Notes under the pieces: model-generated
The model's input: the letters and a program-made list of their open reading frames with translations, nothing else
What the model was told of the DNA's origin: nothing
Database searches by the model: none
Translations under genes and position numbers: made by a program
DNA from: Euprymna scolopes
Lineage: Eukaryota
Length of the DNA: 64,000 bases
Assembly (NCBI GenBank): GCA_053919585.1
Contig: CM132807.1
Reading direction: 5' to 3' (one strand)
In this document: piece by piece, positions 1,348 through 61,995 of the stretch
Layout of the letters: each line of letters starts with the position of its first letter
Position numbering within the stretch: position 1 is the first letter of the stretch

Positions 1348-1554
1348 CACATCGAAGCAAAACAGAGGTCTTTTCGACTTTGGCTGGGGCACAGCAACGA
1401 CATTCACTTTGTATATTACCGGTAGAATCAACATTTGCTTCAGAGTGACAAGAACCACTGCAGGACATAAGGGCGACTGATTCTTTGGACACACAGCCGT
1501 TGACTTTTAGTATCACATTCTTGGTTACTGGTGAACACTTGTCCACAGGTGTCT
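1348..1554 (-). CDS. Exon: C-terminal cystine knot (CTCK), first part
   Basis: 207 nt, phase 1-1, aaacag|...|gtaagt. ETPVDKCSPV...GCVSKESVALMSCSGSCHSEANVDSTGNIQSECRCCAPAKVEKTSVLLRC has the CxGxC and CxCC motifs of mucin/VWF CTCK. Confidence 0.9.
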
Positions 1555-4500: not shown

Positions 4501-6662
4501 CATTGTTGTCGCCATATACTCCGTTATATAAATGTCTTATCACCTGTTATATGTCTCCAATATGTACACCTGCTATGCAACACCTTTATAAATTTTCTTC
4601 AATTGTTCTAAAGATAGTTTTAGTAGAAAATTTCATTCCGGTAAATTCATCAGGAACAATGGCAAAAGAAAGAATCAGTGAGATAAGGTGCATTCAATAT
4701 GTAGCATGAAGGAGAGAGAGAAAGAGGGGGGAGGGTGTAAAAGAAAGATGTTACACTTTTTTTTTTTTTTAAACAATTCTGTTTTTACAGCACCTCAGAA
4801 ACACTGAGTAGCCGTGCCAGTTTTATTATATAAATAAAAAACATAGCTAATCGAACTGTACATTCAGAGAAACTACCAAAATTGTAAGTGATTTTGAATA
4901 CGTATCTGCTTACCTTGTGTGGATGTTGGTGTTAAAGGTATTCTGGTAGTTATTTCTGGTGTTCCTGTTAAGAGACAGAGTAAACATGTCTATATATGCA
5001 CAAAAACGTATATCTAACAATATAAATAATGACTGGAAAATCTTATGTGAAATAAGCATATTTAGTTCATATGACATTTCAGTACAATTGATAACTTCTT
5101 CAGTTATGTAACAGCCAAGAGAAAAAAAACCCACATTGAACAGAAATCCCTCACCATCTCTGAAACATTTTTTGTCAATGAATTAAAATTAAAATTTTGC
5201 CATGCAAAGGCAAAAAAAGTCAAAGAAAAAAGAAAGAGAAAGAGATGTATTGATGTGATGATTATTTCCTCTCACTATGCCTTAATCTTGTGTCAGTATA
5301 TTGAATCGACAAAACTTTTTGTCAACTTTTCTTCTTTTACTTTGTACTTTATCATTATTTCCCGGATATCTATTCATAGCTTATAAAATACATTGGCAGT
5401 TTAGTTGTTTCTTTGATTCTTACTCATAACTCATTTTCAATTTATAAGTTTCAATAGAAATTATAAAAAATCTGAAAAATTCTGAAAAAAAGGGGAGGTA
5501 GGACTTACTTGGATAACTTGTACTTGGGGGTGCAGTTGTTGCTGAAATGAAAACAAATATATTTAGATGCTAAACATTTAGTATGGCATAATCATGGTAG
5601 CATACCGGTACTGATTAGATTATTAAAGTTAAGCAAAATTAAGCCTAGTCAGTACAAGACGAGTGATGAGTAACTATTTACGAATGCTAGACACTATATT
5701 TTGAAGGATAACGACATCTTGCTAAAAACACTAACATTATATAATAATTATAATAATGTTACTATTTAGAAAACTTTTATTAACCGACCAGTATTTAGAT
5801 GACTCTAACCTTACACTAATCTCGTGTTAATATACTGAACTGAAAAACAGAAAAAAATCTGTAACCGAAAGTAATCTTTTATTATGTTTCAATATCTCTA
5901 TATATAGTTATTCCTTCGCCTATAATACCAAGGGAGATAATTCTGTATCCATACAAGCAAATGCTACTATCAATCAACAGCAGTTTTTTTTTTCAACGTG
6001 GTAAGGGCTGTTATAATGTGGTGGCATCAAAGCTACCTGACTAACAGAGTTAGTCAATATTCCCCAACTTTATATCCAGTTGCTTGACTTTGCTACTGTG
6101 GGTGTCAGTGGTATAAACCTGCAATTTTGCTATATATAGCTATGGCAAATAAGGAAAACTTCATATTGACAAGATAATGTTAAGGCATGGACTCTGTGAA
6201 GAAGTCCGATTCACTCAACAAAAAAAGAAAAAAAAACATCAACAAGAGCAGCATGTGAAGAAAAATAAGAGAATGATTGAAAGTTAAAAAAAAAAGATGG
6301 AAAAATGTTTATTTTGAATTATATGTATGTTTCGATGACATTTTGAGTCTATTATTATACTAAAGCTGAAGTAATTTTTGATCCCATCATACATTTTTTT
6401 AAATATTTTAATCACACACCATGCATGTTAAAGCATTCCTTGTTTTTAGGATTGAGTTATATTCAAAATAAATTTTAATTGTTCTAATTAGCTGTAATTT
6501 ACAATTAACTCACCATCTAACTTATAGAGTACCTATCACTCTTGTTCCATTGCTTTCTTTATTTATTAGTAGTTGAAGGTAATAAAAGAATACAAAGATT
6601 GGGACAGCCTATTATACACAAAAGAGGATTTTACCAAGTGTAGTGACCCTTAGTTATAGAAA

Positions 6663-6699
<37 letters not shown>

Positions 6700-8206
6700 G
6701 GTGGCGTATATAATGATTAGAAAGAGACTAATTTGAGATTTTGTCTTTTTATTATTCTATATTTAACTAGCTTTATAAAATGCTTTTTTGCTGATTGCAA
6801 CAATCTGTCCCAAACTCAACCAATGATCCAATGTGTCACATTTTTTCTAGTAAACTTGAAACTAGATACACAAATGAAAACAACTTTTGTTCTGTAAACG
6901 TTTGATAGATTGATTGAAAGATATATACACAAAATATTTGGTTTAGCTCAGATGTTTTTTGAAGATCCTCCACTAGATTGGCAAGTCGATTTTGCGTGCT
7001 GTTGAGACAAGAAAGAATGCTCTTTGTCAAACCTCCCAAGATGTGGCAGTAGTATTCTAAATTCAGACATATCTAAATTTTATATGAGTAGTAAATTGTA
7101 CCAGGAGTCAGGAAATTACGAGAGCGATAGAATGATCTAGTAAGCTTAATAAGAGATTGTAGATGATTGCTACATTTTAGATCTGCAATAAAAGTCAGAC
7201 TTAGGAGTTTATTAAAACATCCAACTTGGATAGTAACAGTATTGTGTCTTTATCTTCTATAAGCTCTAACAATGTCCTCCTGAATTCATTATTAACCATT
7301 ATTTGAAAATTCATCCAGTTTATTTGTTAAACTATTTACATTTGTGATATTTTTAATTTGATGAAGCAACTTTTCTTTTTTTTTTTTTTTTTACAAAAAT
7401 GCAAGTTTTCAAAAGTTTAAGATATTCTCTAGCATAAAACCATTTAAGCAAGTTAAAATATCTGAAGTGGTAAGTTTAACTTGTGTAGTGTTAAAACTTG
7501 TCTTCCTTGTACTAGTAGTTATAAGTTATTTTAGTTATAAGTTCCCTTTATTGTAGAATTATTCAAAGATAAAACGTAAGGATGAATTGAAGACCACATG
7601 CAGACTTTCATGTAATATATTATATTAATTAGTACTTATATTAGACGAAATATATTTGCATAAATAACTTACTTGGTAAATGGAAACAAGCGTCAATTTT
7701 AACCCAGATCTTATAATTCTCTGGATATTTTCCAGATTCAAGAATACTGGGTGATTCCAAAATGATCTTTACTGCTGTCGCCTTTTCACCATTATTAAAT
7801 CGGAATATTCCACCAACATTGCTGCCGCCAAAAACTTTGTGGAATTTTGTTGAGCCTGGACGTTGTACAAGTATCGTGGCTTTATTGACATTGCCTAAGA
7901 GTTCAAGCTTGTTCAGTTCAACTCCTTCAGGGTCATTAGTCAGTTTAATAGTGAGTGTTGGTTTCGGGTCAAATGGTTCAGTTGGAACTCGTACAATCCA
8001 TCCAGGTTTATTAGGTCGGACATCGCTTACAAGACATTCAGGTGTGTATGGTACTCCAGTAATGAATTCATCAGGGATGATGTTTATATCACTCATACCC
8101 TCAATAGACTCACAGCGAACTGCAAATTGAATAAGAGAACAAATATATTAAACATTTAGCAAGTTTCGATTTTTTTATATTTCTCATGAATATTAAAAAT
8201 CACATG

Positions 8207-8240: not shown

Positions 8241-11200
8241 CACGCACACATTTGTTTTAACAAAATTAATATAAAGTACTATTTCCTTGTTGAAAACATT
8301 TGAAAAATATTTAGCAATTTTATAATTAAACCACCAGATACTCATTACGGACTAAATATTCTGTTAGTTAATAATATTATGAATTAAACAAACAAAATAG
8401 TTTTCAATCATTTTTGTGTTCCTTAAAAATATTTAAATCAAGATATATATTGGTACTTTATGAACAAAAAAATATTTATATATTATTTTAATATTTCAAT
8501 TGAGGCTCCATAATTTGTGCATTGATTTTTTTTTTCTGGACTGTTATTTTTATCTTCATAGTTGTTGTTTTACTGCGTTTCATCACCACACAGAAGATAG
8601 AGACGTTGAGTCTCTACAGTTCCATGTAAGCATTGTCTGAAGATAGCGGTTTCAATCCTTCACAAAGCAGGCCAGAGGTGGTGAGACAACAACACCTATG
8701 GAAGGCAGTAATTACTTGGGATACAGGTACAAAACTCAGCATTCCTATCCCTTATCGTGGTTAACCACCTGAAGAAGACCAGAAGGTGAGTTGCTGAAGT
8801 GTGGTGGGACAACAACAACTATAAAGATGAGAATAACAGTCCACAAAAAAAAAAAAAAAATCAATACAAAAGAAAAAATATGCGCTTTAAATAAATAAAA
8901 ATGTATGTAAGGATATTTTATTTGAAAATATACAATACAAACTATCAATAAATCATGAGAAATAAAAAAAAAATGTTCTTAAATATAAATTCACTTACGT
9001 GGTGTGGTAGTTTTCTGAGTAGAGGTTATTGGAGATGCTGAAAAGGAATATATGGTAAAATTACAGTATTATAAGAGAAATTGTTTCAAACATTATTAGT
9101 TATACAAAGTCAAATACTACATAGTTCAGTATTTTTGAAATTTCTGGAAAATAATTTTATGATAGAGTTAAAAATTATATAATTAATTTTATTAAATAAT
9201 CTGCATTTCATAATATTTTCATCAATCTTTTCTTAATTCTATATTTATCAGTTAGTATATTTGTGTATTTATTATAGTTATAAGTATACTTATTTTTTAT
9301 ATACTATTAAAAATATCATGAAATCGAATTTCATTGATTACTGATATTTTTAAGCATCTAAGATTTATATATCTACATTTTTTATAAATTTTCGAAACAT
9401 CTACATTTTTATAAATAATTCATACATAATTTCTGTTATAGAAAAAAACATAAAAATAGGTCAAAAGCATTCTGATACAAAATCTACCTATGGACACTCC
9501 TGAATGTAATTATAGACACTTTGAATGTTATTAAAAAATATCGACATTTTTTATATATTTAAAAAAAAATCTACCTAGCAGTTTTCAGAGGCATTTCGAT
9601 ATAAAACCTATCTATGAACACTCCCAGACACGTAATGTACATTTGTGCGTAATTAAAAAACAAAAACAAATCGACCATTCAGTTTTCAGAGGCATTTCTG
9701 ATATAAAACCTATATAAGAACACTTCTAGGTACATAAAATACATTTGTGAGTAATTTAAAGAAAAAAACAAGCTCAGCAGTTTCGTTGCCCATAGCAAAC
9801 GAACTAACACACACGAATATAAATGTAAGTAGAGATAATGTTAAAACTTGTCTTCTTTGTACTAGAAGTTATAAGTTATTTTAGTTATAAGTTACTTTTA
9901 TTGTAGAATAATTCAATGATAAAATGTAAGAGGTAAGGAAGTGCTCCCTCTTTTAACTAAGATAAATATAGCATTAAGATATTTAATCACTAAACTAATA
10001 AACGCATGAATTGAAGACCACATGCAGACTTTCACTTAATATATTAATTGGTACTTGTATCAGACTATAAATATACTTGCATAAATAACTTACTTGGTAA
10101 ATGGAAACAAGCGTCGATTTTAACCCAGATCTTATAATTCTCTGGATATTCTCCAGATCCAAGAATACGGGGTGATTCCAAAATGATCTTTACTGCTGTC
10201 ACCTTTTCAGCATTATCAAGTTCAAATATTCCACTAATATTGCTGCCACCAACAATTTTGTGAAATTTTGCTGAGCCTGGAAGTTGTGCAAGTATCGTGG
10301 CTTTATTGACATTGCCCAAGAGTTCAATCTTGTTCAGTTCAACTCCTTCAGGGTCATTAGTCAGTTTAATAGTGAGTGTTGGTTTCGGGTCAAATGGTTC
10401 AGTTGGAACTCGTACAATCCATCCAGGTTTATTAGGTCGGACATCGCTTACAAGACATTCAGGTGTGTATGGTACTCCAGTAATGAATTCATCAGGGATG
10501 ATGTTTATATCACTCATGCCCTCAATAGACTCACAGCGAACTGCAATTTGAATAAGAGAAAAATATATTAAATATTTAGCAACTTTATAATTAAACAAAC
10601 AGAATAGACGTTACAGAACAGGTATTCTGATAGTTAATAATATTATGAATTCAACAACAAAACATTTTTGAATCTTTTTGTGTTTCCTTTACAAATGTTT
10701 AAATCAAGATATATATTGGTATTTTATAAACAAAAAAAATTGTTTCAAATAAAAATGTACACTCATGAGCAAAAAAAAAAAAAAAAAAAAATGTGCCAAG
10801 AGCGGAAGAAAGAAGAAATCGATTTTTCAATATTTTCCCATGAATTTTTGTTAATTTTGATTGAAAATTTTTATTTTGCAGATCATTATTATTATAGTAT
10901 ATAATAATAAGTGGAAAAATTAATCCTAAAAATGGTAAGACCGCATCTTGGCGAGGATATAAAAAACCGAATTGCAGGATTAAGGCAGTCGAAAATGACT
11001 TACAAGCAGATTTTTGATATTTTAAGAAAAGAAAATGTGAAAACATCTCTTTCTGCCGTGGTTTGAAGTTGGAAGCTCGGTAAAAACGAAATCTGAATCT
11101 TGTCGCCCTAGAACATCCACTTTGAAGGACGACAACAGGCTTAAATTAAGTGTTTTGAAGGATTGAAAGAAAACTTATGTTGACCATAGCAAAGAATTCA

Positions 11201-42637: not shown

Positions 42638-42698
<61 letters not shown>

Positions 42699-50470: not shown

Positions 50471-50532
<62 letters not shown>

Positions 50533-52998
50533 ACAGCAGAAATAAGAGAGTGAAGGAAAAAAGCAATTGTGAGACAAGGTCAGTTAAACTACAGAATCAG
50601 TTAATACTAGTTTTACCTGGTTCAGCAGTTGATGATGGGAAAGTCCATTCAATTGTTTCCTCTGTTATAGGTAACACTTCCGTAAAAGCAGTAGTTGTTT
50701 TAGTTGGTGTAGTAGATGGAGAAGTAGTTTGTGTCGAACCTGTATTGAATTTGAACAATAGTGAGTTGGATAAACAAATATGATAACTTAATCTAACAAA
50801 AGAATCTGAAAATATTGTTACAGAAAATTACTCGTATCTCTATAGAAAAAACAAACTTTTTTTATATGCAAGTCGAGGTCAAAATGCTTTCAATTAAAGC
50901 AATTGTATTTTAGGAGCTTCAACAATATTTTTATAAACCATTTTTTAATAGCTAAGCTTCTGCAAGTCCGTTTATAGAAATTGCTAACAACTATTAGACT
51001 GGATATAATTATAGTTATTTTCTTACCTAAGTTATGACTCAATAATATACAAGATGTTTATTGAATAAAAGATAACTGCTTCTTTTTCCAACAATTATCC
51101 TCATAACAGGGATCATTTTACCATGTAAAATTGGAAAAATATGGACATAGTATTCATCGTAAGGAATATGAAATGTCCTTTTCTATCCAATGGTATCAGC
51201 ATGATATTATATCAATGTATAATGAATCTAGTATTGAATCATAAATTCTGAAACTATTGAAATTAATTTACATTATATGGACCAAAAAAAAATTCAATCT
51301 CAACCACCTAACAGAATAACAGATTTGATAAAATTAAAAAAAAATACCTTGAAAAATTTCAAAATTTGTATTTGATTTTTAATGTATGTCATTTTAAAAT
51401 AAGACCCCATTTTGGGTACAATTTACAAAGTTACATTAAAATATGATTTTTTAAACATGGATAAAAAATTAAATTTATATTTCATAAAAATGTATCTATT
51501 TGTGCATATATAGACATAAACTATGAAAAATAATGTTGAATCTTTCAACGGTTGAGGTTATTTTGGAACTTCTAAGTACAATGAATTATTTACATATTTG
51601 TAAGTAATTTTGTAATAATTTCTATTGTATATAAAATATTCTAAACATTTGTAAAATTTCAACAGTGACTAAGCAGACTGAAATTTTGACACTAGTAAGT
51701 TGGATAAACAAATAAACTTCAATATGAGAAAATAGTAATCTAAAAATATATTCCTACTAAAAATTGTTTATTATTTATAGTTAAAAATGCTTATTTAGAT
51801 AGATTAGGTCCAAATAAGCAATTCTAAAGCAGTTTAACTTAAGAGCTCCTACTAGATATTTAGGAAGCGTCTTTTAATTAGTAACATTGTGCAAGATGGC
51901 TTACAGAAAATTGTAGCAAATATTTGATTAGACATAATTATAACTATATTTTTTTTATCCGAGACATATATTAATACGCATAACAGGAATAATATTTATA
52001 TGTAGAATTTGTAAAATATGGATAAAACACTCGGTCTAAAAAATATGAAATATCCTTACTTGGCAATTTGAAACATGCTTCAATATCCAGCCAAACTCTA
52101 TAGTTTGCACTCTGATCAGCTTCTTTTTCTTCCAAAATAACCTTGATTGCAGTCACTTTGTCAAATGTCTTTGAAATATATGGTCCAGTGATTTTATTGG
52201 CACCAGGAATTGCTACAAAACCTGTAGAGCCTGGTAATTGTACAAGAATTGTGATCTTCTCAGCATTACCGCTTACATCAACCTTGACCAACTCAATTCC
52301 TTGAGGGTCATCAGTCAGTTTAACAGTGATGCTAGGTTTCGAGTCACCTGATGTAATCGGCACAGGTGCAATCCATCCAGGCCCATTAGGTCTGGCATCA
52401 CTTACGGGAGAGTTTGGTGTGTTTGGTGTTCCACTAATTAAATCATCAGGAATGAGACTTTTATCATTCATACCTTTAGATGATTCACATCGAACTGTAA
52501 TTGGAACAAAAATAAAGTAATAATTAAAACTTCATTTAATAACTTAAAATGAAAACATATATTAAACAATAAATCTCTGATCATTTAAACTTTAACTTCA
52601 ATTTTATAAAATCCACTTTGGTAAAGTATTACATAGACAAACAAAGAAGATTTATTTATTTAAATTTCACTTGAATAATTGATAGTTTTGAAAATTAAAT
52701 TGTCTTAGGAATCGGAATAATTATTCTTACATATGATACTGTAAATGCTATTTATTTCAAACTATTTTCTTAATGTGCGAATCCTTACATTATCAATGAA
52801 TTAATTCCTCACCTGGTGTTGTTGGAGTACGTCCTGATGTTGTTGGAGTACGTCCTGATGTTGTTGGAGTACGTCCTGGTGTTGTGGTGATTGTAGGCGT
52901 TACTGTTATGTGTAAAAATGGAGAAGCAAACGTTTTTAGATGTTGGATTTGTTTGAAAGAGTTTATCATACAAAATAGCTATTAGTATATGGAAGTAA

Positions 52999-53061
<63 letters not shown>

Positions 53062-56000
53062 AAAAGTATTATATGGGATGAATCTTAAACATGAACCTTC
53101 ATACGGTTCCATTTTTTGTAGCTCATTTTCTTGAGTAAGTGAGTGTGTTTGCTTAACGGCATTTCAACTTCTAGCGGTCATTTAATGCCAAGAAAAGATT
53201 TATTGACATAAGGAGTGTTCAATGTCTTGAAAAGTTTATTTTCAGAAGCAAGATGCTTTAAATTTCCGAAAAGTTTGTTTTTAAATGTAAATTTATATTA
53301 AACATTATAAATTTTCAGATGTAATGAAAAGTAAGCTTAAACATTTATTCCGCATTCCCACATTGTCTGGATAGTTTGTTCCTGTTGGTTACTCTGCTTA
53401 ATCATCATTTTGTTAAATAGTCTCTTTTGATTAGAAGCATGGAATATGTTACCATATGGAAGTAAAAAGACTACATGATTATATGGTAAATTATGTCAAG
53501 AAGATTATGAATGTTGTCTGATAAGCCACGGTCAACAACTAGGAAATATTGGAGAGGTGAGACCTACAATATGTGATGGATTAAGAAGACGGCTGTCTAC
53601 CAATGCTCTATTCCTTAGTGTCAAAGGAAGAGAAATCAGGGAAGACCTATACTAAGATAAAATTTACAGTTAAAAGAAACATTAAATGGAGGAATATCAA
53701 CACAGCCATATGAAAAATACAATATCAAATGGAGAATATTAAGTGGAGGAATATTAACACAATCATATGAAAAACATAAACTGGAACAGTGTAATCATAG
53801 CCTGATGACCTTCATGAAACTGTCATCTATGCTTTGACAAACTGTATATGATGATAATAGGAGCTTTTATTTCTCAAGCAACTTTTTTATTAGATTTAAT
53901 GATAAAATAAATTTGAGATTCTCGTCAGTTCTTCCTGAGCTAATAAAGCTGACTTATAAACAGGTCAGAAAATTCAAAAGACAATAAATTACAAGGAATG
54001 AAGAAAAATAAAGCTTTATTTTTGCCTCAAGATATATAGATTGAACCCCCATTTGAAAACTTAAAAAGTTACTTATGTTTGTAAACATTTTGTATATAAT
54101 AATTTTGCTAATTAATTATATTAATGAAAGACAACAAATTAAGAATGTAATCGATTTTTCCAGCCTTAACCAAATCCGCTTGGAATTGGCTCATAAACTA
54201 ATTAGGCTAAAACAGAAATGAAAATTCAGAATATTTAGTTTATACGATCTTTTCTTGTTGATATAATGTTTTATATTGGGATTAGTTTGAAAAATAGCGT
54301 TTAAGAAAAATCTTTTAAAAATTAAATTTGAAATAAATTGTCAAACATTGAACAAAATATCAAAGTCTATTTTAGCATCAATACATGTTGTAAATTGAAC
54401 TTCTATCTGAACTCAAAACATGTTATTCATATTTATGTTTTACAGCATTTTATTTATAATCTAACGTTCTTATTATATTTAAAAATATTTCAAGCATACT
54501 TTCAGTAAATTAATTATTAAAATAAATAAACAAATGAAAAATGTATATCATTTGAAATTATGCAAAAATATGAATATAAATAAATCATGAAATAGAATTT
54601 TGGAACAAAAATAAAAAAAAATGTCACCAAATAGTAATCTGCTTACCGACTGTGGTAGTTTTCTTTGTGGATGTTGTTGGAGATGCTGAAAAATGAATAT
54701 ACAGTTAAAATAAGCAATATTATTGGATAAATTATTTAAACTGTTTATTCTTCATTCAAAGTTAAATACGTTTTAGTTTTATTTACTTATCTTCAATATA
54801 ACATCATAGTATATTTGTTTGTGTATAAATTAGAAAAAAATAACATTAAAACTATGTTAATTGATTGAGAAAGTTTACATAACTACATTTTTTATAAGTA
54901 ATTTCTTCATGAAACACATTAAGCATATAAACTATAGACATTAGTAAATTGGATGAATGAGATAATTTTATTTCTATAATAAAAGTAATCTGAAAATAAC
55001 TTTGCTAGAAAATTACTTGTATCACTAGTTGTAAATGAAATTGATTAAGGGAGACGTGGCCCGAAATACTCACAATTAAAGCAGTTCACTTCTAGAGATT
55101 ATCACAATACATTCAGAAAAATTTTACTTAATACTATTCTACAACGTCACTTTCAAAAAATATTAGCAACTATTAGCTATAATTATAGCTATTTTGTTAT
55201 CTAAGCCATGTAATATTATTGTAAAAAATACTTTGTAAATAAAAGATACCCGATTGTTTTGCAACAAAATACGCTCGCTAAGATAATACTATTTATAGAT
55301 ATAGATTAGCAAAAGTATGACTAAAACATTCAGTATATGTTATTTGAAATGTCCTTACTTGGCAATTTGAAACATGCTTCAATATCCAGCCAAACTCTAT
55401 AGTTTGCACTCTGATCAGCTTCTTTTTCTTCCAAAATAACCTTGATTGCAGTCACTTTGTCAAATGTCTTTGAAATATATGGTCCAGTGATTTTAGTGCC
55501 ATCAGGAATATTTTTGAAATATTCTGATCCTGGATATTGTACAAGAATTGTGAATTTCTCGGCATTGCCATTCACATCGACCTTTGTTAGCTCTACCCCT
55601 TCGGGATCATCGGTAAGTTTGACTGTAATAGTTGGTTTCGGGTCAAGAGATGAAGTCGGTACTGGTGCAATCCATCCAGACCCCTCAGGTCTGACATTAT
55701 TTATAGGAGAGCTTGGTGTTTCTGGTGTTCCACTAATGAAGTCATCAGGAATGAGTATTTTATTATCCATGCCTGCAATAGCTTCACATCGAACTGTAAT
55801 TGAAACAAAACAATAAGAAAACATTAATTTTTACAATTTTACATGAAAATAACAATTAGTCAATAAATTTAACCCAATGTTTTACTAAAAGCTATGTTTT
55901 TCCATATTTGTAAAGTATTACCTATGCAAAAAATGAATATGATATATTTGTTTCAATTTCACAATTTATACTTTTGAAAATAACATTGTTTCAACAATCT

Positions 56001-56274: not shown

Positions 56275-56343
<69 letters not shown>

Positions 56344-59300
56344 GTGGATATTACAAATATCAGTGAAGATATAGCTTGGATATTTAAGTTAATTATTGGT
56401 ACGTGGTTGTCATTAATTTCCTATCTATAGTAGACTCACATCGAACTGTAAGTGGCACAAAAAAAAAATAAAATAAAATAAAAAATTTCACTGAAATTCT
56501 CTGTAACGGATCCAAGCATTGTATGTAGAGACAGTTGCAAAGAAAGTAAGAACTTCAACACAAACTTTTACTGTAGATAAAAAAGTTCTTTATTTTCTTT
56601 GTTTAACATGCAAGTCGCCAACACGTAGTTAACATCAGTCTGTTTTCTCGTTTTCTCATCCACGTCCACAGTCTGTCATAACATGGTACCAGACACAGCT
56701 TACTGTCATTATACGGCACCAGACATAGTTGGTTCTTCAACAAAGTGGGAAAGAAAAAGACCCGTCTCCTGCTTGCCAAGCCCATTCTCTGTGTCTATGC
56801 ATGCATTCTGCTTTGTGACATCACACCCATGTCACGGCTTGAAATGCTAACCTGCATGTCATTTTAATGGCAGAACCCAACTACGTGATAATTGTTCATG
56901 AAAATAAATATTAGTCAATCAGTCGTCATTTACCTATAAGCCTCAATGAAATAACATTTCTATTTTAGTAAAATATCACAAAGACAATATGAAAGAAATA
57001 TTTGTTTTAATTCCACTCAAATAATTGTTACGTTTGCAAAGGCAATGTCTTAAAAATTTGAAAGTATACTTCTCACATATGATGCTAAGAATAATATTTA
57101 TTTCAGTTTATTGTCATAATATGTGAATATTTAAATCATCAATTAATTAGTTTCTTACCTGATGTTGTTGAAGTACGTCCTGATGTTGTGGTTATTTTAG
57201 GCATCGATTTTCAGTAGAAAAAGAAAAAGTAAAATTTTGTTAGATTTAGGATATTGTAAAAATATTTTCTGTACATTGTATCTTATAAAATTGCTTTTGA
57301 TGTGAAGATGGCGGTTGTAGATAGAAATACTATATCAATTTTAGTGGATATATTTTTATAAAAAAATGGATACTGTATAGTTAATATTATTGTTATGTAT
57401 TTTCCGTCCAGTGATGATGATGATGATGAAGTAGATATAAAAGGGGAAAGAATTGCTGATTTCTCGTTCAAACTCTATTCATCTAACACTTATCGTTGAC
57501 TATTGTTTGACTAGAAGTGGTATTTTTTAGTTCCTTACATCAAGTAGATTCATGTCTTGTCTCAAGCGATTTAAAAAAAAATTACATTGGAATAGACAAA
57601 CAGTGAATGTCTATTTTAGCATCTATACACCTTGCTTTAACCTTTATCTGAAAACTTTAAAAAGTTATTAATGTTTTAAACATTTTGCATATAATCTGAT
57701 ATTTTAATTATAATAAACAGTATCTAACTCAAAGCTTTTAATAAGCTGATAATACAAATAAATTGATAAACATTTAATTCAGGTTTATTTCACTGAAAAT
57801 TGTGCAAAGAATATCAATAAATTATAAAACAGTGTTTATTAGAAAAAATTTAAAATGCCTCCAAATATTAACCGACTTACCTACTGTGGTAGTTTTCTCT
57901 GTGGATGTTGTTATTGGTAATGCTGCAAATAAATATATAATAATTACAATAGCAACATTATTGGAGAAATTGATTAAACTTTATTATTTATTAGTCATTC
58001 AAAGTCAAATAGATTTTTGTTTTATCAAACTTTTTTTGTATTATATTTCTTAGTATATTTGTTTGTTTTTGAATCAGAAAAAATATTAAAACTATTTTAA
58101 TTTTTTTCAGGGTAGCTTTAAACTGAGAAACAAAAACCGGTACCAAAGAGAAATGTCAAAGTCAGTCTACTGTACAGGAAAAAAAGAAAAGCTGATTCAC
58201 ATTTTATATCTATAACGGACGTTTATGCTTGTCACTGACTATTCAAAAAAGAAGTAGAAAAAGACTACATGAATTCAAAATGAAAATCATATAAAAGACA
58301 AAAGCAAAAAGGAACATTTAATGTCACAATAAGAGCAACTATAAGCTATAATTATAGCAATTTCGTTAGCTTAACCATACAATAGTGGTGTAAAAAATTG
58401 TGAAGTTAGATTTTTGGATGTTTTTACAACAAATCTCACAATGATAGGAATAATATGTAGAGTTGGTTAAAATATAGATAAACTACTTGAACTAAAGATT
58501 ATTAAATGTCCTTACTTGGCAATTTGAAACATGCTTCAATATCCAGCCAAACTCTATAGTTTGCACTCTGATCAGCTTCTTTTTCTTCCAAAATAACCTT
58601 GATTGCAGTCACTTTGTCAAATGTCTTTGAAATATATGGTCCAGTGATTTTAGTGCCATCAGGAATATTTTTGAAATATTCTGATCCTGGATATTGTACA
58701 AGAATTGTGAATTTCTCGGCATTGCCATTCACATCGACCTTTGTTAGCTCTACCCCTTCGGGATCATCGGTAAGTTTGACTGTAATAGTTGGTTTCGGGT
58801 CAAGAGATGAAGTCGGTACTGGTGCAATCCATCCAGACCCCTCAGGTCTGACATTATTTATAGGAGAGCTTGGTGTTTCTGGTGTTCCACTAATGAAGTC
58901 ATCAGGAATGAGTATTTTATTATCCATGCCTGCAATAGCTTCACATCGAACTGTAATTGAAACAAAACAATAAGAAAACATTAATTTTTACTATTTTGCA
59001 TGAAAATAACAATTAGTCAATAAATTTAACCCATAGTTTTACTTAAAGCTATGTTTTTCCATATTTGTAAAGTATTACCTATGCAAAAAATGAATATGAT
59101 ATATTTGTTTCAATTTCACAATTTATACTTTTGCAAATAACATTGTTTCAACAATCTTCATAATAACACTTACATAAGATACTAAGTATTGTTTTTTTTT
59201 ATCTTAATCTAGTGTCTTAATGTGTGAATACTTATATCATCAATTAATTCATTTCTCACCTGGCGTTGTTGAAGTAGTTCCTGACGTTGTTGAAGTGCGT

Positions 59301-61995
59301 CCTGATGTGGTGATTTTAAGTAGAAAAAGAACAAAAAGGAACATTTTGTTAGATTTAGCATATTAAAAACTATTTTCTGCATTTTATTTCCTAGAAAATA
59401 TTTTTTGTCTGAAGTTGGCAGCGGTGAAGTAAGGACTGTATATCAATTAATGCATAGTGAGTATTATTAATATAAGAATGTCGGTACTGTATAATGAATA
59501 TTCTATAGTCAACATTACTGACATGAAAAGGGTGGATATTGTATAGTAAATATTATTGATATAAATAGTGGATTCTATATAGTGGATAATTTATAAATAA
59601 TATTATTGTTATCAAATGATCTGCAGTGATATTATTCTTCGTCCCATCAGTAGATGTGATACTAAACGGGTTTCACTACCTCAATAACCCAGATTTTTTA
59701 TTCGGTAGCTATCTCAAAGCTAATTTCTTTAAAAACCCTTTCCAGACTATTGAACTGAACCAACAATCACAACCAAAAAGTGTCAGGAGAAGAATATTGA
59801 CTATTTTGCATATCTTATCCTAGTGTGCTTATCATTATACAACAATAAAACTTACAATTTTAGATATTCATAACTGAAATTTTGTGGTTATGTTTGTTAT
59901 AGACTAAAGTTTATTTGTACAAAATTTGGTTGGATTGTGAATTTTATTAATGATTTCATACGTGACATTTTTTTGGGGGGAGTCACCTCATAATTTTTTG
60001 TGGAATTGATATTTCTAAATTTTACTTTTTAACTATTTGTGTCCTTCAAACATACAAGAGCCTTTAATTCCCAAAAGCTTAGAAAACATTTTGCATAGTG
60101 AATAATGCTATTTAATCTTCAAAGATTTTCACACACAAACATGTTTCATCTTTTATTATATAAAGGGCAAATGTCTGTGTGTATGCATGCATGTTTGTAT
60201 GTTCAGCTAACATTTAAAAAATATAAAAGAATCTCCTACAAAGTTGGTAATTTTTATAATTGGCTTAAATTTTTTATTAAATTTTCATTAATTTTTAAAA
60301 TCTATTTCATTCAGTAGCTTTCATTCATTTTTTCTCATTCTTTCAACATAATATTCTGCACACATTTTTACTACTGTCCAGATTCCATCTTCTTCTGAAG
60401 TTATCAATCCAAGCCTCACATTACATATCCATCTTATTATCTTTATATCATTTATCTTAATGCACCACATATTCTCAATGTTCACTGCCATATATCATAG
60501 TACATATTAATGCCCGATAGACTATTTCCTTAGTCGACAATGGTAACCTTCAGTTTGTACTCCAATTTTAGGATATGTATATATATACAGGTAGAGAGTT
60601 GCATAGTCAGGTAAATCAACTACCTTCACTAAAATAAGTTATTACTTTATTGTTAATTCATATATTCTTAGTGATGTCGATCTATAATGAGAAACGAGAA
60701 TAACAGAAAACTTGAGAAAGCTTTATTCTACTTAGAATAACTGATACAGCTGTAGTAAGCTTTTAGTTTTGCACTTAACTAAAGAGTTCTCCGAAACGAA
60801 GGTAATCAAAATAAATGAGTTTACTCTTGATTACTTATTACACTGCCTTCGAATGAAACTGAGTTTCAGACTCTTTTGCAAAGGAGTGAAGTATAGTATC
60901 TGTTCTGTTACTCCACGTTAATTTTTCTATCCTCGATCAGTGAAGAAGAAGTTCTTCTGGGCTGAGGTAATTTTAATTTTTGTACCAATCCAGTATCCTT
61001 TTCTAGGGAGCTGAATTTTCCTCACATTAAAAACTGACCTATTGTTTAACTCTGTCCTCATGTGGAGACAAGTAAATAGAAAATGAGCCTCAGACTAAGA
61101 AATCATGTTTTAGTCTTACCAACTTATTTTCCTTTGCAGTTTAGTCTTAAAGGTGGTTGTCCAACTCTTTCGATTTAAAAAATGGGAATATTTGAAATTT
61201 AAAAAAATATATATACTTGTTTTTATTTTATTGTTTTTTTTTTTTCACTTGAAATCGTATTTGCATGTTATTGTCTAGAAAAGTAATATTTAAAATCTTG
61301 AATAAATAACATTTTCTTCCAAAATTCAAGTCTGGATCAAAATATAGTAACTGCTCTACCCTCATTAAAGCCCTGTAGCACTAAAAATGGACATACCTAA
61401 TATTAAGTTCAGTTATGTGTCACATCCAATTTTCATATGTTGGCAAGTATATGGTAATTAGAATCATATTTACTGTATGTAGTTATTAAGGATTTCTGCA
61501 CAATGTACTGATCATAGTTATTTCTTGTTAATATACACTATGTATGCAAAAAGGAAATAAAAGTTTAGTGGGATTTGAACATAGAAATCATTTTTTTATT
61601 TCATCAAAGTTTCCCAGCATATATTTTAACAAAAATCATACACATATTAACAGTGATCGTCTACCTAGTTAGCCATCAGTTTTTAACACTTTACAATCAG
61701 TACTCTTAAAAATATGTCAATAAACAAGATGTGTTTTACCCGAGACTAAAATGGAACAAGTAGACATTGTATTACCTGTTGTGGTCGACATTTGACTTGG
61801 CGTTGTTGACAAAAATACTGTTGTTTGAACAGTTGTTAAGTTTCCTGGTTTGCAAATTGGACAGCATTTTCCTTCTATGTACTCCCAAGTTCCATAACAG
61901 GGTTGGTCAGAGCATTTAATAGTCTCTTTCTTTAACATTGGACCAGGTTCACATGTTAGTTTCGTACAAGGACCATCATTCCATTCGGCATTAAC
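1348..61995 (-). CDS. Multi-exon mucin/VWF-like secreted protein (partial): VWC - (Thr-rich linker + discoidin/F5-8C-like domain) x11 - Thr-rich - CTCK
   Basis: 33 exons with AG/GT boundaries join in one open frame (6436 nt). VWC and CTCK cysteine motifs flank an alternating PTS-linker/domain array. No start codon or terminal exon found in the window. Confidence 0.88.
2850..3050 (-). mobile_element. Penelope-like terminal-repeat fragment with hammerhead-like core
   Basis: Minus strand CACCTGAAGAAGGTCGGAGGTTATATCGACCGAAACGTTG: CUGANGA, a GGTCG/CGACC stem, then GAAA. Confidence 0.5.
4914..4964 (-). CDS. Thr/Pro-rich linker exon (51 nt)
   Basis: taacag|..TPEITTRIPLTPTSTQ..|gtaag, phase 1-1. 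Confidence 0.75.
5509..5541 (-). CDS. Thr/Pro-rich linker exon (33 nt)
   Basis: tttcag|..TTAPPSTSYP..|gtaagt, phase 1-1. Confidence 0.7.
5580..5697 (+). pseudogene. Degenerate 5S rRNA-derived sequence (pseudogene or SINE3 head)
   Basis: ACCGGTACT..GAT....AAGTTAAGCAA.....GCC..GTCAGTAC..GA.G.GTGA is collinear with 5S rRNA box A/IE/C; many substitutions. Confidence 0.5.
7673..8119 (-). CDS. Domain exon, type A (most C-terminal copy), discoidin/F5-8C-like
   Basis: 447 nt, ttgcag|..RCESIEGMSDINIIPDEFITG...KIWVKIDACFHLP|gtaagt, phase 1-1. Confidence 0.9.
8521..8865. mobile_element. MITE-like insertion with ~50-bp imperfect terminal inverted repeats
   Basis: attgattt..tggactgttatttttatcttcatagttgttg vs caacaactataaagatgagaataacagtccac..aaatcaat; not seen in the paralogous introns. 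Confidence 0.5.
8999..9037 (-). CDS. Thr-rich linker exon (39 nt)
   Basis: tttcag|SPITSTQKTTTP|gtaagt, phase 1-1. Confidence 0.85.
10094..10540 (-). CDS. Domain exon, type A (divergent C-terminal half)
   Basis: 447 nt, same splice sites and phase as 7673-8119. Confidence 0.9.
10760..12060 (+). mobile_element. Degenerate Tc1-family DNA transposon
   Basis: TA flanks; TIR cactcatgagcaaaa / ttttgctcacgagtg (14/15); broken transposase motifs VFWSD, GGIMVWG, FQHDNAPAH, PGQSPELNxIENIW. Confidence 0.9.
12066..17805 (+). mobile_element. Internally deleted Gypsy LTR retrotransposon (outer element)
   Basis: TSD TATGT at 12061-12065 and 17806-17810. 5' LTR TGTTGTA..GACA at 12066-12245, then tRNA-iMet-like PBS TGGTATCAGAAGC. 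Integrase remnant TSSPHYPKSN...YRAT...GRLIRT, resuming as YRRNRQFIKP after the nested insert. Partial 3' LTR ends at 17805. Confidence 0.9.
12983..17314 (-). mobile_element. Full-length but frameshifted Gypsy-like LTR retrotransposon nested in the outer integrase
   Basis: LTRs 16981-17314 and 12983-13308 (TG..CA); TSD ACATC at 12978-12982 and 17315-17319; PPT AGGGGGAG; order gag, protease, RT (LDLRKAYLQV, FGLNVAP, YIDD), RNase H (VDAS, AELDA, TDS), integrase (HAQSGHPG..CETC, LTDN, NGIAER). Confidence 0.95.
17898..17936 (-). CDS. Thr-rich linker exon (39 nt)
   Basis: SPITSTQKTTTP, AG/GT, paralog of 8999-9037. Confidence 0.85.
18424..18870 (-). CDS. Domain exon, type A
   Basis: 447 nt, AG/GT, phase 1-1. 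Confidence 0.9.
20060..20098 (-). CDS. Thr-rich linker exon (39 nt)
   Basis: SPITSTQKTTTP, AG/GT. Confidence 0.85.
20320..21400 (-). mobile_element. 5'-truncated degenerate LINE (CR1/L2/Jockey group) RT fragment
   Basis: GVPQRSILGPLLFLIFINEL...IFADDTMLY; WLVTFNAAKT; LYLYKATICP. Confidence 0.85.
21477..21923 (-). CDS. Domain exon, type A
   Basis: 447 nt, AG/GT, phase 1-1. Confidence 0.9.
22510..23080 (-). mobile_element. Decayed L1/Tx1-like LINE C-terminal (zinc-finger) fragment
   Basis: EASLTWLVIRDAL and HCGDEDETLCHVF resemble the zf-RVT region; many breaks. Confidence 0.4.
24120..24167 (-). CDS. Thr-rich linker exon (48 nt)
   Basis: aacag|TTEMTTTSGRTTTTP|gtgag. Confidence 0.8.
24689..24760 (-). 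CDS. Thr-rich linker exon (72 nt)
   Basis: ttttag|PGPTTGSTSTGTATTTTTPLITT|gtaaaa. Confidence 0.8.
25652..25705. repeat. (TA)n microsatellite; others at ~42640, ~53001, ~56277; (CA)n at ~8205, ~40132, ~50472; (GA)n at ~6667
   Basis: Directly visible. Confidence 0.95.
27043..27084 (-). CDS. Thr-rich linker exon (42 nt)
   Basis: tttcag|SPITTSTKKTTTT|gtaaat. Confidence 0.8.
27666..28100 (-). CDS. Domain exon, type B
   Basis: 435 nt, ttacag|QCESSKGMNDKSLIPDEYIRG...KVNLDVEACFHLP|gtaagg, phase 1-1. Confidence 0.9.
28402..28443 (-). pseudogene. Linker pseudo-exon (donor GT>AT)
   Basis: Paralog of the 24120 and 56102 linkers (MPKITTSGYTSTS); acceptor intact but donor reads atgag instead of gtgag. 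Confidence 0.6.
28765..28890 (-). CDS. Linker exon of six 21-nt (TSTTSGP-like) repeats; ancestral acceptor mutated, in-frame cryptic acceptor available
   Basis: Donor gtaag intact. Ancestral aacag is aacaa at ~28914. Internal catcag|G gives a 126-nt phase 1-1 exon. Confidence 0.5.
29085..29700 (-). mobile_element. Decayed LINE RT fragment (same group as 20320-21400)
   Basis: IDIYADDKNIY and LQPLSHKRDVASLFLLYRY. Confidence 0.7.
30850..30921 (-). CDS. Thr-rich linker exon (72 nt)
   Basis: ttatag|TGPTTGSTSTGTPTTTSTPLVTT|gtaaaa; paralog of 24689-24760. Confidence 0.8.
32896..33435. mobile_element. Mariner-like non-autonomous remnant(s)
   Basis: tatgaggggcgtttcaaaagta pairs with tacttttagaatgaccctcata (33211-33232); second TIR-like end ttttggagcgacccttgta at ~33433; internal direct repeat. 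Confidence 0.5.
33537..33578 (-). CDS. Thr-rich linker exon (42 nt)
   Basis: SPITTSTKKTTTT, AG/GT. Confidence 0.8.
34157..34204 (+). pseudogene. U2 snRNA 5'-end fragment
   Basis: CTTCTTGGCCTTTTGGCCAAGATCAAAGTGTAGTGTCTGTT vs U2 CTTCTCGGCCTTTTGGCTAAGATCAAAGTGTAGTATCTGTT; rest of U2 absent. Confidence 0.8.
34430..36075. repeat. ~159-bp satellite-like array, ~10 units, with inverted block ~34505-35160
   Basis: Recurring gtcgaaattagtaacatatccaagaattatgaaaaatgatgaaatgtgagttaattgattggtgtg in both orientations. Confidence 0.9.
36524..36958 (-). CDS. Domain exon, type B
   Basis: 435 nt, AG/GT, RCESSKGMNDKS...RVWLDIEACFKLP. Confidence 0.9.
37854..37895 (-). CDS. Thr-rich linker exon (42 nt)
   Basis: ttacag|SSTTTFTKSTTTK|gtaagt. 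Confidence 0.8.
38626..39110 (+). mobile_element. DINE-1/HINE-like (Helentron-derived) non-autonomous element; copy at ~48968-49452
   Basis: Starts AACAAG; (GGAC/CAGA)-type microsatellite; terminal hairpin ggtccc...gggacc followed by aa. Confidence 0.55.
40247..40369 (-). CDS. Thr-rich linker exon (123 nt)
   Basis: atacag|STQTTSPSTTPTKTTTAFTEVLPITEETIEWTFPSSTAEP|gtaaaa. Confidence 0.8.
41699..42133 (-). CDS. Domain exon, type B
   Basis: 435 nt, AG/GT, phase 1-1. Confidence 0.9.
42452..42541 (-). CDS. Thr-rich linker exon (90 nt, 21-nt repeats)
   Basis: aacag|TPTITTTPGRTPTTSGRTPTTSGRTPTTP|gtgag. Confidence 0.8.
44279..44317 (-). CDS. Thr-rich linker exon (39 nt)
   Basis: SPTTSTKKTTTV, AG/GT. 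Confidence 0.8.
44515..46428 (+). repeat. Second copy of the ~159-bp array (~11 units) plus Helitron 3' end; 5' end absent
   Basis: Unit starts at 45001, 45160, 45319; ends with hairpin + CTAG at 46425-46428. Confidence 0.9.
46867..47301 (-). CDS. Domain exon, type B (duplicate of 36524-36958)
   Basis: 435 nt, identical translation. Confidence 0.88.
48197..48238 (-). CDS. Linker exon (42 nt; duplicate of 37854-37895)
   Basis: AG/GT, same sequence. Confidence 0.8.
50617..50739 (-). CDS. Linker exon (123 nt; duplicate of 40247-40369)
   Basis: AG/GT, same sequence. Confidence 0.8.
52060..52494 (-). CDS. Domain exon, type B (duplicate of 41699-42133)
   Basis: 435 nt, identical translation. 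Confidence 0.88.
52813..52902 (-). CDS. Linker exon (90 nt; duplicate of 42452-42541)
   Basis: AG/GT, same sequence. Confidence 0.8.
54647..54685 (-). CDS. Linker exon (39 nt; duplicate of 44279-44317)
   Basis: AG/GT, same sequence. Confidence 0.8.
55359..55793 (-). CDS. Domain exon, type B
   Basis: 435 nt, RCEAIAGMDNKILIPDDFISG...DIEACFKLP. Confidence 0.9.
56102..56170 (-). CDS. Thr-rich linker exon (69 nt)
   Basis: aacag|TPKITTTSGRTSTTSGTTSTTP|gtgag. Confidence 0.8.
57159..57179 (-). pseudogene. Linker pseudo-exon or 21-nt cryptic micro-exon
   Basis: Donor gtaag intact; ancestral acceptor lost at ~57206; first downstream AG (catcag) gives in-frame RTSTTS. Confidence 0.4.
57881..57922 (-). 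CDS. Thr-rich linker exon (42 nt)
   Basis: ttgcag|LPITTSTEKTTTV|gtaagt. Confidence 0.8.
58516..58950 (-). CDS. Domain exon, type B (most N-terminal copy; same translation as 55359-55793)
   Basis: 435 nt, AG/GT, phase 1-1. Confidence 0.9.
59260..59301 (-). CDS. Linker exon (42 nt) requiring an internal catcag acceptor
   Basis: Donor gtgag; pyrimidine tract followed by first AG at 59302-59303; in-frame RTSTTSGTTSTTP. Confidence 0.55.
61776..61995 (-). CDS. Exon: C-terminal part of a VWC domain plus Thr-rich tail
   Basis: 220 nt, phase 0-1, ttttcag|VNAEWNDGPCTKLTCEPG...KCSDQPCYGTWEYIEGKCCPICKPGNLTT...TTT|gtaata; W...C....C...C....C...CCPxC is the VWC signature. Confidence 0.85.

What the first reader, a model, noticed from the sequence alone, without database searches (positions are those of the whole stretch)
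1348..61995. Beads-on-a-string mucin-like protein: VWC - (O-glycan linker + discoidin-like domain) x11 - CTCK
Seen: 11 copies of a 145-149 aa globular domain alternate with short Thr/Ser/Pro linkers between a VWC and a CTCK domain. Known: CTCK dimerises VWF and gel-forming mucins, and F5/8C domains occur in invertebrate VWF-like proteins such as hemolectin and in echinoderm adhesive proteins. Inference: the usual long single-exon PTS region is replaced by a multivalent array of putative binding domains on short glycosylated spacers. This suggests a polymerising mucus, adhesive or matrix protein with an architecture I do not recognise as a named gene.
Basis: partly seen in the sequence, partly recalled or inferred. 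Interest (0 to 1): 0.8.

Follow-up and report, generated by a model that had tools for sequence, protein, structure and literature searches.

The report
Tail of a giant squid mucin gene
The window holds the last tenth of what looks like one enormous squid gene for a mucus-type polymer, in which more than a hundred small clotting-factor-like "beads" alternate with short sugar-carrying spacers; limpet, chiton, octopus and flatworm have smaller, unstudied versions of it.

Summary
The minus strand carries 11 intact single-exon copies of a 144-148 aa domain bracketed by cysteines, 21 short Thr/Ser/Pro exons, a VWC exon and a CTCK exon.

The domain has no Pfam hit, but a pLDDT-95 model matches neuropilin b1, factor V/VIII C and DDR discoidin domains (Z 15, 2.7 Å over 131 of 144 residues). 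"Discoidin-like" therefore holds at fold level.

The interpretation needs widening: this is not a whole gene.
- The VWC is split by an intron, and its first cysteine lies 84 bases beyond the window.
- The CTCK ends in an exon 62 bases before the window.
- Upstream on the same strand lie TIL/VWC exons, at least 107 more copies of the domain (at least 118 over 500 kb), and three VWD-C8-TIL sets at C25:32.277-32.321 Mb.
- Only one CTCK is detectable at the locus.

The best reading is one gel-forming-mucin-type gene of about 640 kb. No transcript evidence could be obtained, because the only read-laying run failed.

Annotated but unstudied homologues with VWD x3 plus the same domain array exist in Patella (13 copies), Octopus (3), a chiton and Macrostomum. 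This is a hugely expanded variant of a conserved spiralian mucin family. The scan earlier noted another giant discoidin-type mucin-like gene elsewhere in this genome (s1-295490).

The parts
61776..61995 (-). VWC exon (C-terminal four fifths of a VWC domain) plus a short PTS tail; enters in phase 0, leaves in phase 1. An alternative donor lies at 61740.
   Evidence: PF00093 26.6-27.9 bits. Acceptor ttttttcag|G at 61995. The first Cys and 'GKFYD' of the domain come from an exon at window-relative 64084-64188, outside the window.
59260..59301 (-). PTS linker exon (RTSTTSGTTSTTP)
   Evidence: phase 1-1, AG/GTGAG, 85% S/T/P
58516..58950 (-). discoidin-fold domain exon 1 (144 aa)
57159..57179 (-). 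possible mini PTS exon (uncertain)
   Evidence: phase 1-1, AG/GTAAG, only 6 codons
56102..56170 (-). PTS linker exon
55359..55793 (-). domain exon 2 (identical in sequence to exon 1)
54647..54685 (-). PTS linker exon (SPTTSTKKTTTV)
52813..52902 (-). PTS linker exon (TPTITTTPG(RTPTTSG)n)
52060..52494 (-). domain exon 3
50617..50739 (-). PTS linker exon (40 aa)
48197..48238 (-). PTS linker exon
46867..47301 (-). domain exon 4
44279..44317 (-). PTS linker exon
42452..42541 (-). PTS linker exon
41699..42133 (-). domain exon 5 (identical to exon 3)
40247..40369 (-). PTS linker exon
37854..37895 (-). PTS linker exon
36524..36958 (-). domain exon 6 (identical to exon 4)
33537..33578 (-). PTS linker exon
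30850..30921 (-). PTS linker exon
28765..28890 (-). PTS linker exon ((PTSTTSG)n, 41 aa)
27666..28100 (-). domain exon 7; the copy closest to the large upstream array (86-97% identical to those copies) and the one modelled
27043..27084 (-). PTS linker exon
24689..24760 (-). PTS linker exon
24120..24167 (-). PTS linker exon
21477..21923 (-). domain exon 8 (148-aa subtype, with one extra Cys)
20060..20098 (-). PTS linker exon (SPITSTQKTTTP)
18424..18870 (-). domain exon 9 (148-aa subtype)
17898..17936 (-). PTS linker exon
10094..10540 (-). domain exon 10 (148-aa subtype)
8999..9037 (-). PTS linker exon
7673..8119 (-). domain exon 11 (148-aa subtype)
5509..5541 (-). possible last PTS exon (TTAPPSTSYP; uncertain)
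   Evidence: phase 1-1, AG/GTAAG
1348..1554 (-). first CTCK exon (8 of the 11 cysteines), phase 1-1. The second and last coding exon lies at window-relative -62 to -160, outside the window, and is followed by AATAAA.
   Evidence: PF00007 28.4 bits. Sequence. The spliced CTCK has 98 aa and 11 Cys.

Best explanation
The window is the 3' end, about one tenth, of a single very large minus-strand gene of the VWF / gel-forming-mucin type. The gene spans roughly C25:31,681,840-32,320,700, or about 640 kb.

Order of parts along the gene: three VWD-C8-TIL assemblies; a VWC-like exon; about 107 units of 'discoidin-fold domain exon plus 1-3 short PTS exons'; a cysteine-rich block (EGF/TIL-like, TIL, TIL+VWC, VWC); 11 more units, which are the window; and a cystine knot.

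Proposed way of working:
1. The protein is secreted and dimerises tail to tail through the 11-Cys CTCK.
2. It multimerises head to head through the D assemblies, as VWF and MUC2/5B do. Steps 1 and 2 are inferred by homology.
3. Its long middle is a chain of rigid 16-kDa beta-sandwich beads. Each bead is closed by a disulfide between its first and last cysteine. The beads are joined by 13-80-residue, probably O-glycosylated, stiff spacers. The sequence shows this; the glycosylation is inferred.
4. The beads give the polymer over a hundred weak binding sites, probably for glycans or other surface ligands as in discoidins and CBM32. These would cross-link the gel or hold particles, microbes or a substrate. 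This step is speculative.

Because every repeat exon is phase 1-1, any subset can be spliced in frame.
For: Domain array:
- At least 118 copies lie on C25:31.690-32.191 Mb, all on the minus strand and none with a stop.
- All 78 copies that I could read have an AG acceptor and a GTAAG donor in phase 1.

Mucin ends:
- VWD, C8 and TIL hits form three ordered sets at 32.277-32.321 Mb on the same strand.
- A VWC-like exon lies at 32.245 Mb.
- Only one Cys_knot hit exists on C25, the one in the window.
- The VWC and CTCK exons are unique in the genome.

Continuity across the upstream (5') edge of the window:
- TIL and VWC exons lie 2-9 kb upstream of the window's VWC.
- The window's VWC lacks its first Cys. 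An exon at window-relative 64084-64188 supplies it. The splice gives CEYPPKSGKFYD|VNAEW, which aligns with the Dimorphilus VWC at score 104 against 81 for the alternative.
- Forty exons with canonical splice sites give one 2,547-aa ORF from window-relative 71017 to the stop.

CTCK: across its splice the sequence fits CC-x13-C-x2-[GN]-x12-C-x-C-x(2,4)-C (the pattern is from memory of PROSITE CTCK).

Selection: dN/dS is 0.30-0.37, and no exonic differences occur in a 98.9%-identical duplicate.

Fold: pLDDT 95; Z 15.0 and 2.7 Å over 131 aa to neuropilin b1, FV/FVIII C, DDR1/2, CASPR2 and discoidin I.

Homologues that hold VWD x3 and the array in one annotated protein: Patella XP_055959230 (signal peptide, 13 copies); Octopus XP_052827192 (one copy before and two after its Cys-rich block, the same order as in this locus); Macrostomum A0A1I8G0U9.

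Expression: the VWC exon and the upstream TIL+VWC exon are held by the same eight small runs (13-160 million letters, too small for DNA of a 5.9-Gb genome) from six studies. One poly(A) RNA-seq run holds the VWC exon.
Against: - No transcript was seen.
The 5' part is known only from hit coordinates, and about 87 kb between the third TIL and the first detected copy is unexamined apart from one VWC-like hit.
- The squid Cys-rich block shows only generic similarity to the octopus protein.
- No ligand is known for the domain.
- Pfam's F5/8C model does not detect the squid copies.
- Perfect 4.93-kb repeats in the array could be partly mis-assembled.
Confidence: 0.68

Rival explanations
1. There are two genes. 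A shorter gene starts at an unrecognised first exon between window-relative 71 kb and 81 kb and encodes TIL/VWC block - 11 domains - CTCK, about 2,600 aa. The upstream array with the VWD assemblies is a separate gene that ends without a cystine knot.
For: The gaps of 9.6 kb and 22 kb around the Cys-rich block are larger than the usual unit spacing. The 11 window copies are the most divergent of the array, at 51-77% identity to copy 7 against 86-97% for the upstream copies. No junction-spanning RNA was seen.
Against: Exon (a) at window-relative 71017 enters in phase 1, like every repeat exon. No CTCK or other terminal exon is detectable for an upstream gene. The Octopus and Patella models keep the VWD assemblies and the arrays in one protein, and the octopus model has copies on both sides of its Cys-rich block. 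Copy 7 inside the window belongs to the upstream subtype.
Confidence: 0.22
2. The gene is as in the best explanation, but the beads bind nothing. They serve as compact, protease-resistant structural spacers or weak self-association modules, as proposed for the CysD domains of MUC2/MUC5B. The material is a structural matrix (egg jelly, capsule or adhesive cement) rather than a lectin-like mucus.
For: The copies are highly similar and evolve in concert: 55 distinct sequences among 78 copies, with variation mostly in one loop at residues 46-51. No canonical F5/8C sequence signature is detectable. Gel-forming mucins of vertebrates intersperse non-lectin CysD beads (established knowledge).
Against: All the closest structural neighbours are ligand-binding discoidin or CBM32 domains. 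This is only fold-level evidence and predicts no function.
Confidence: 0.35
3. The array is a decaying or mis-assembled tandem repeat and is not expressed as protein.
For: Some copies are identical, and there is a perfect 4.93-kb higher-order repeat. No reads were laid on the sequence.
Against: None of at least 118 copies has a stop. All 78 copies read have conserved splice sites. dN/dS is about 0.3. The differences between duplicates are confined to introns. The exons are present in small, probably transcriptomic runs and in one poly(A) RNA-seq run.
Confidence: 0.03

Closest known systems
Vertebrate gel-forming mucins (MUC2, MUC5AC, MUC5B, MUC19) and VWF
   Same: Three N-terminal VWD-C8-TIL assemblies, C-terminal VWC modules and an 11-Cys cystine knot. 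A Ser/Thr/Pro-rich middle is interrupted by small globular domains (CysD in MUC2/5AC/5B).
   Different: The PTS is cut into about 120 short spacers of 13-80 aa, each in tiny phase-1 exons, instead of one giant exon. The globular beads have a discoidin fold, not CysD, and they dominate the mass. There is no fourth VWD before the VWC modules. Eleven bead units sit between the last VWC and the CTCK.
Patella vulgata 'mucin-2-like' XP_055959230; Liolophura sinensis 'mucin-2-like' XP_064614628; Octopus bimaculoides LOC106875009 XP_052827192; Macrostomum lignano A0A1I8G0U9; Dimorphilus gyrociliatus CAD5117733/35
   Same: True sequence homologues of the bead domain (E 1e-16 to 1e-55). They alternate with PTS spacers in the same way. 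Patella, Octopus and Macrostomum have VWD x3, C8 and TIL at the N-terminus.
   Different: They have 1-13 copies against at least 118 here. Patella adds LDLa repeats and Macrostomum adds EGF repeats. None has been studied and all names are automatic. No CTCK is visible in those models, which may be incomplete.
Insect hemolectin/hemocytin and sea-star adhesive Sfp1 (from my own knowledge; Sfp1 domains also as cited in PMC6410801)
   Same: Secreted VWD/C8/TIL proteins that also carry discoidin (F5/8C) domains and act in clotting or adhesion. Hemolectin ends in a CTCK.
   Different: They carry one or two canonical F5/8C domains that Pfam detects. They have no array and no PTS spacers. Homology of the discoidin parts was not tested here.
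F5/8 type C (discoidin) domains: neuropilin b1/b2, factor V/VIII C1-C2, DDR1/2, discoidin I, bacterial CBM32
   Same: The same beta-sandwich over the whole domain (Z 12-15). The length is about 145-160 aa, with cysteines at both ends as in the animal members.
   Different: Sequence identity is 8-17%. PF00754 gives no hit for the squid copies. The family has its own conserved motifs (GM-DP--IPD, RP---GW--PVP, KP-ITV-L, GN, ACF).

Membership tests
Gel-forming mucin / VWF family | Three N-terminal VWD-C8-TIL assemblies (D1, D2, D'D3) | tested here: met
   Ordered hits on the same strand at C25:32,320,735-32,277,400. VWD hits are, C8 x3 and TIL x3. This holds for the locus; whether they belong to the same transcript was not shown.
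Gel-forming mucin / VWF family | C-terminal cystine knot (CTCK) with 11 cysteines | tested here: met
   PF00007 scores 28.4 bits against a cut-off of 24 on the first exon. The spliced domain has 98 aa and 11 Cys and fits the CTCK spacing pattern. It is the only such hit on C25.
Gel-forming mucin / VWF family | Central Pro/Thr/Ser-rich, O-glycosylated mucin region | tested here: inconclusive
   The spacers are 64-81% S/T/P but only 13-80 aa each. The window-encoded part is 15% Thr overall. Glycosylation cannot be tested here.
Gel-forming mucin / VWF family | All parts in one polypeptide | tested here: inconclusive
   Phase continuity, a single ORF over 40 exons and the homologues' architecture support it. 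No reads could be laid.
F5/8 type C (discoidin) domain, PF00754 | Match to the family profile above its threshold | tested here: not met
   The squid copies give no hit at E <= 1. Two of 31 relatives reach E 3e-4. A profile of the family against PDB sequences gives neuropilin-1 only at E 0.5.
F5/8 type C (discoidin) domain, PF00754 | Distorted jelly-roll beta-sandwich of about 150 aa | tested here: met
   The AF2 model has pLDDT 95 and pTM 0.89. Most of the top 50 Foldseek matches are discoidin or CBM32 domains, with TM 0.54-0.70 by query across those 50 rows. VIA gives Z 15.0 and rmsd 2.7 Å over 131 aa.
F5/8 type C (discoidin) domain, PF00754 | Cysteines at the N- and C-terminus that form a disulfide | tested here: inconclusive
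   Cys140 is invariant and Cys2 is present wherever the N-terminus is covered. They align with the ends of neuropilin b1 residues 273-428. The bond itself was not measured.
VWC domain, PF00093 | Profile match and the 10-Cys pattern with CxxCxC and CCxxC | tested here: inconclusive
   The score is 26.6 bits or 27.9 bits against a cut-off of 27.6. There are 8 cysteines: CCPIC is present and CxxCxC is replaced by C-x4-C. The N-terminus is encoded outside the window.

The most novel reading that the evidence does not exclude
All of the at least 118 bead units, the three D assemblies and the CTCK are spliced into one mRNA of about 70 kb. The protein would then exceed 20,000 residues, in the size class of titin and MUC16. 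It would be a new kind of 'lectin-mucin', in which discoidin-fold beads bind the O-glycans of neighbouring chains so that the gel cross-links itself. The bead would be a spiralian-specific discoidin subfamily that is not yet in Pfam.
Probability: 0.25. Interest if true: 0.78.

Novelty: new variant of a known kind. Interest (0 to 1): 0.56.

Why it matters
Invertebrate mucus, egg jelly and adhesives are materials of wide interest, but their backbone genes are mostly unknown because they are huge and repetitive. This locus gives four things.
- A full map of such a gene in a cephalopod.
- An undescribed, highly divergent branch of the discoidin domain, conserved across molluscs, annelids and flatworms and always found in VWD-type secreted polymers.
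- An extreme case of exon-array expansion: 3 copies in octopus, 13 in limpet and at least 118 here, all in phase 1-1, which allows isoforms of very different length.
- A testable idea for how a mucin can carry its own cross-linking lectin modules.

If the protein is confirmed, it would be among the largest known.

Tried and rejected
- **The fetch from genomes beyond C25:32,006,000:** The 5' third of the locus is known only from hit coordinates.
- **The search for homologous proteins with the VWC exon:** nothing found.
- **The search for homologous proteins with domain 11:** one unnamed 170-aa Logan protein on genomic-looking contigs, so no cDNA was obtained.
- **Alternative acceptor at 62048 (phase 1) for the VWC exon:** considered because Pfam aligned a Cys upstream of 61995. 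Rejected because the 64084 to 61995 splice has stronger splice sites and gives a much better VWC N-terminus.
- **Macrostomum homologue as the adhesive protein Mlig-ap1 or Mlig-ap2:** rejected. Those have one or two VWD and different repeats (PMC6410801), while the hit has three VWD.
- **Literature searches** for gel-forming mucin with squid, cephalopod or discoidin: no description of this gene or domain.
- **Pfam on single domain copies** and a sequence-only PDB profile search: uninformative.
- **Language-model atlas search:** leans to F5/8C and galactose-binding-like families, but all scores are below 0.9.

Full report
**What is in the window**

The window is C25:31,682,001-31,746,000 of a 5.9-Gb genome. 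Earlier notes of the scan call the animal a squid. The DNA is about 30% GC, apart from a GC-richer retroelement at 12-18 kb.

tblastn with one copy finds exactly 11 copies of the repeat domain, all on the minus strand. Each copy is one exon with the boundaries ...cag|TT CGN TGT ... CCA A|gtaag, so it enters and leaves in phase 1. Seven copies (27.6-58.9 kb) encode 144 aa. Four copies (7.6-21.9 kb) encode 148 aa and carry an extra cysteine. The two subtypes are about 50% identical.

Between the copies I found 21 candidate phase 1-1 exons of 6-41 codons. They have canonical splice sites and 64-100% Ser/Thr/Pro. Spliced together they give linkers of 13-80 aa.

**Are the exons real?**

Four observations say yes.
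- Among the diverged copies (dS 0.34-0.56), dN/dS is 0.30-0.37.
- An 8.1-kb tandem duplicate (36401-44501 and 46744-54871) is 98.9% identical. All 45 mismatches lie outside the six predicted exons it contains, two domain exons and four linker exons. There are 0 mismatches in 1,164 nt against 7.5 expected, P = 5e-4. This also argues that the duplicate is not an assembly artefact.
- The VWC exon is held by one poly(A) RNA-seq run.
- The VWC exon and an upstream exon are held by the same eight runs of 13-160 million letters, which are far too small to be DNA of a 5.9-Gb genome.

No splice junction is therefore confirmed.

**What the bead is**

Pfam finds nothing in the squid copies, even at E = 1. 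A profile of the copies run against 1.84 billion representative proteins finds only 67 relatives.

Adding 25 of these relatives to the alignment raised the AlphaFold model from pLDDT 70.6 to 95.0, with pTM 0.89. Most of the top 50 Foldseek matches of that model in the PDB are discoidin (F5/8C) or CBM32 domains; the exceptions are two chains of proteasome-bound TXNL1. An exhaustive structural search gives Z 15.0 and rmsd 2.7 Å over 131 of 144 residues to neuropilin b1. Factor V/VIII C domains, CASPR2, discoidin I and DDR1/2 follow at Z 14-15.

Two of 31 family members reach PF00754 at E 3e-4. The conserved first and last cysteines sit where the animal discoidin disulfide sits.

The bead is therefore a very divergent discoidin-fold domain with its own motifs. 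"Discoidin-like" is right for the fold. Membership of the Pfam family is not met.

Among 50 distinct 144-aa copies, variation is concentrated in one loop, residues 46-51.

**The window is not a whole gene: 3' side**

The CTCK exon stops at Cys 8 in phase 1. The rest (GWGRERLHTFDKIISCACHQC..., then a stop) lies in an exon at window-relative -62 to -160, followed by AATAAA. The spliced CTCK has 98 aa and 11 cysteines and fits the classical CTCK spacing.

**The window is not a whole gene: 5' side**

The VWC exon starts in phase 0 and lacks the first cysteine of the domain. An exon at window-relative 64084-64188 ends in phase 0 at a GTAAGT donor. It supplies ...CCRCIPEKPMCEYPPKSGKFYD, which finishes one VWC and starts the next. 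The spliced N-terminus aligns much better with a Dimorphilus VWC than the alternative that I first favoured.

Further upstream lie these exons:
- a TIL+VWC exon (PF01826 E 1.6e-5; PF00093 E 8.4e-6);
- a small Cys-containing exon;
- a PTS+TIL exon;
- an EGF/TIL-like+PTS exon that enters in phase 1.

Forty exons, all with AG/GT sites, give one ORF of 2,547 aa from window-relative 71017 to the stop. Of these, 34 exons encoding 2,178 aa lie in the window.

**The whole locus**

A search of the genome with the domain profile finds 121 matches. Of these, 118 lie on C25:31,689,674-32,190,510, all on the minus strand and none with a stop.

I could read as far as 32,006,000. In that part there are 78 copies, and all have an AG acceptor and a GTAAG donor in phase 1. 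They include a 4.93-kb two-domain higher-order repeat present about 13 times.

Upstream on the same strand are three ordered VWD, C8, TIL sets at 32,320,735-32,277,400 and a VWC-like exon at 32,245,337. The window's CTCK is the only Cys_knot hit on C25. The window's VWC and CTCK exons are unique in the genome.

Together this is the canonical frame of a gel-forming mucin or VWF: D1-D2-D'D3 ... VWC ... CK. The middle is made of about 118 bead and spacer units over about 640 kb. If all units are used, the protein would exceed 20,000 residues. That figure is an estimate, not a measurement.

**Relatives**

The named relatives are as follows.
- Patella vulgata "mucin-2-like", 4,007 aa: signal peptide, VWD x3, C8, TIL, LDLa x5, then 13 copies with PTS spacers.
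- Octopus bimaculoides LOC106875009, 3,066 aa: VWD x3, C8 x3, TIL, VWC. One copy lies before its Cys-rich block and two after, the same order as in the squid locus.
- Liolophura "mucin-2-like": 7 copies with PTS spacers.
- Macrostomum VWFD proteins: VWD-C8-TIL x3 and 6-7 copies.
- Dimorphilus proteins.

These annotated models join the D assemblies and the array in one protein, which supports the one-gene reading. They also show that the architecture is a conserved spiralian one and not unique to this squid. None has been studied. The Macrostomum hit is not the adhesive protein Mlig-ap1 or Mlig-ap2 (PMC6410801). I found no paper that describes the domain or the gene.

**How it probably works**

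By homology, the CTCK would dimerise and the D assemblies would multimerise, giving long disulfide-linked polymers. The sequence shows that the middle is a string of rigid discoidin-fold beads on short, probably O-glycosylated spacers.

By analogy with the fold's ligand-binding relatives, the beads may offer many weak binding sites that cross-link the gel or hold targets. This last step is speculative. A purely structural role, like that of CysD domains, is a serious rival.

**Verdict**

The thing is a greatly expanded variant of a known kind, a gel-forming mucin, built on an undescribed discoidin subfamily. The main open point is transcript continuity.

The scan earlier noted another giant mucin-like gene with split discoidin-like domains on another contig of this genome (s1-295490). 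I did not test its relation to this locus. My profile gives only weak hits on C8:104.2 Mb, next to VWD, C8, TIL and Cys_knot hits there.

Noticed in passing
window 12000-18000: A GC-rich (42-48%) degenerate LTR-type retroelement lies on the minus strand inside the intron between domain exons 9 and 10. Its ORFs are broken and include RNase H (PF00075, E 6e-7) and the integrase zinc-binding domain (PF17921, E 7e-7).
   Followed up: partly
window 36401-44501 and 46744-54871: An 8.1-kb tandem segmental duplication at 98.9% identity carries two domain exons and four linker exons. All 45 mismatches are intronic. A shorter duplicate (55340-56163 and 58499-59318, 97.9% identical) makes domain exons 1 and 2 identical.
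   Followed up: yes
C25:31,899,000-31,961,000 (window-relative 217-279 kb; loci L020-L026): A 4.93-kb higher-order repeat holding two domain exons (spacing 3,668 + 1,265 bp) recurs about 13 times almost perfectly. It is either very recent amplification or gene conversion, or a place where the assembly should be checked.
   Followed up: partly
G000 C8:104.21-104.95 Mb, minus strand: A second locus has VWD, C8, TIL and Cys_knot hits and weak matches to the bead profile (E about 1e-4). It may be a paralogous mucin-type gene, perhaps the one of earlier finding s1-295490.
   Followed up: no
G000 C19:138.2-138.8 Mb, plus strand: Dozens of regularly spaced VWD, C8 and TIL hits form a large tandem VWD-C8-TIL array of the FCGBP or zonadhesin kind.
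   Followed up: no
window 40100-40230 and 50440-50600: (TG)n/(CA)n microsatellites lie in the introns of the duplicated unit and differ in length between the two copies.
   Followed up: no
window 7762-8130, 18513-18881, 21566-21934, 27749-28099, 55442-55816, 58599-58973 (+ strand): Open frames of 116-124 aa lie antisense to the domain exons. They recur because the exons recur. I saw no sign that they code for anything.
   Followed up: no
G000 C46:86,052,719-86,052,970: An isolated partial copy of the bead domain (profile positions 1-84, E 2e-35) lies on another contig, away from the array.
   Followed up: no
protein P0012 (JGI metagenome, 1,208 aa on a 7.6-kb contig): An apparently intronless protein carries a canonical F5/8C domain (PF00754, E 5e-7) directly followed by a good copy of the bead domain (E 4e-37). 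This hints that the two are related but distinct, and that the bead family also occurs outside the named spiralians.
   Followed up: no
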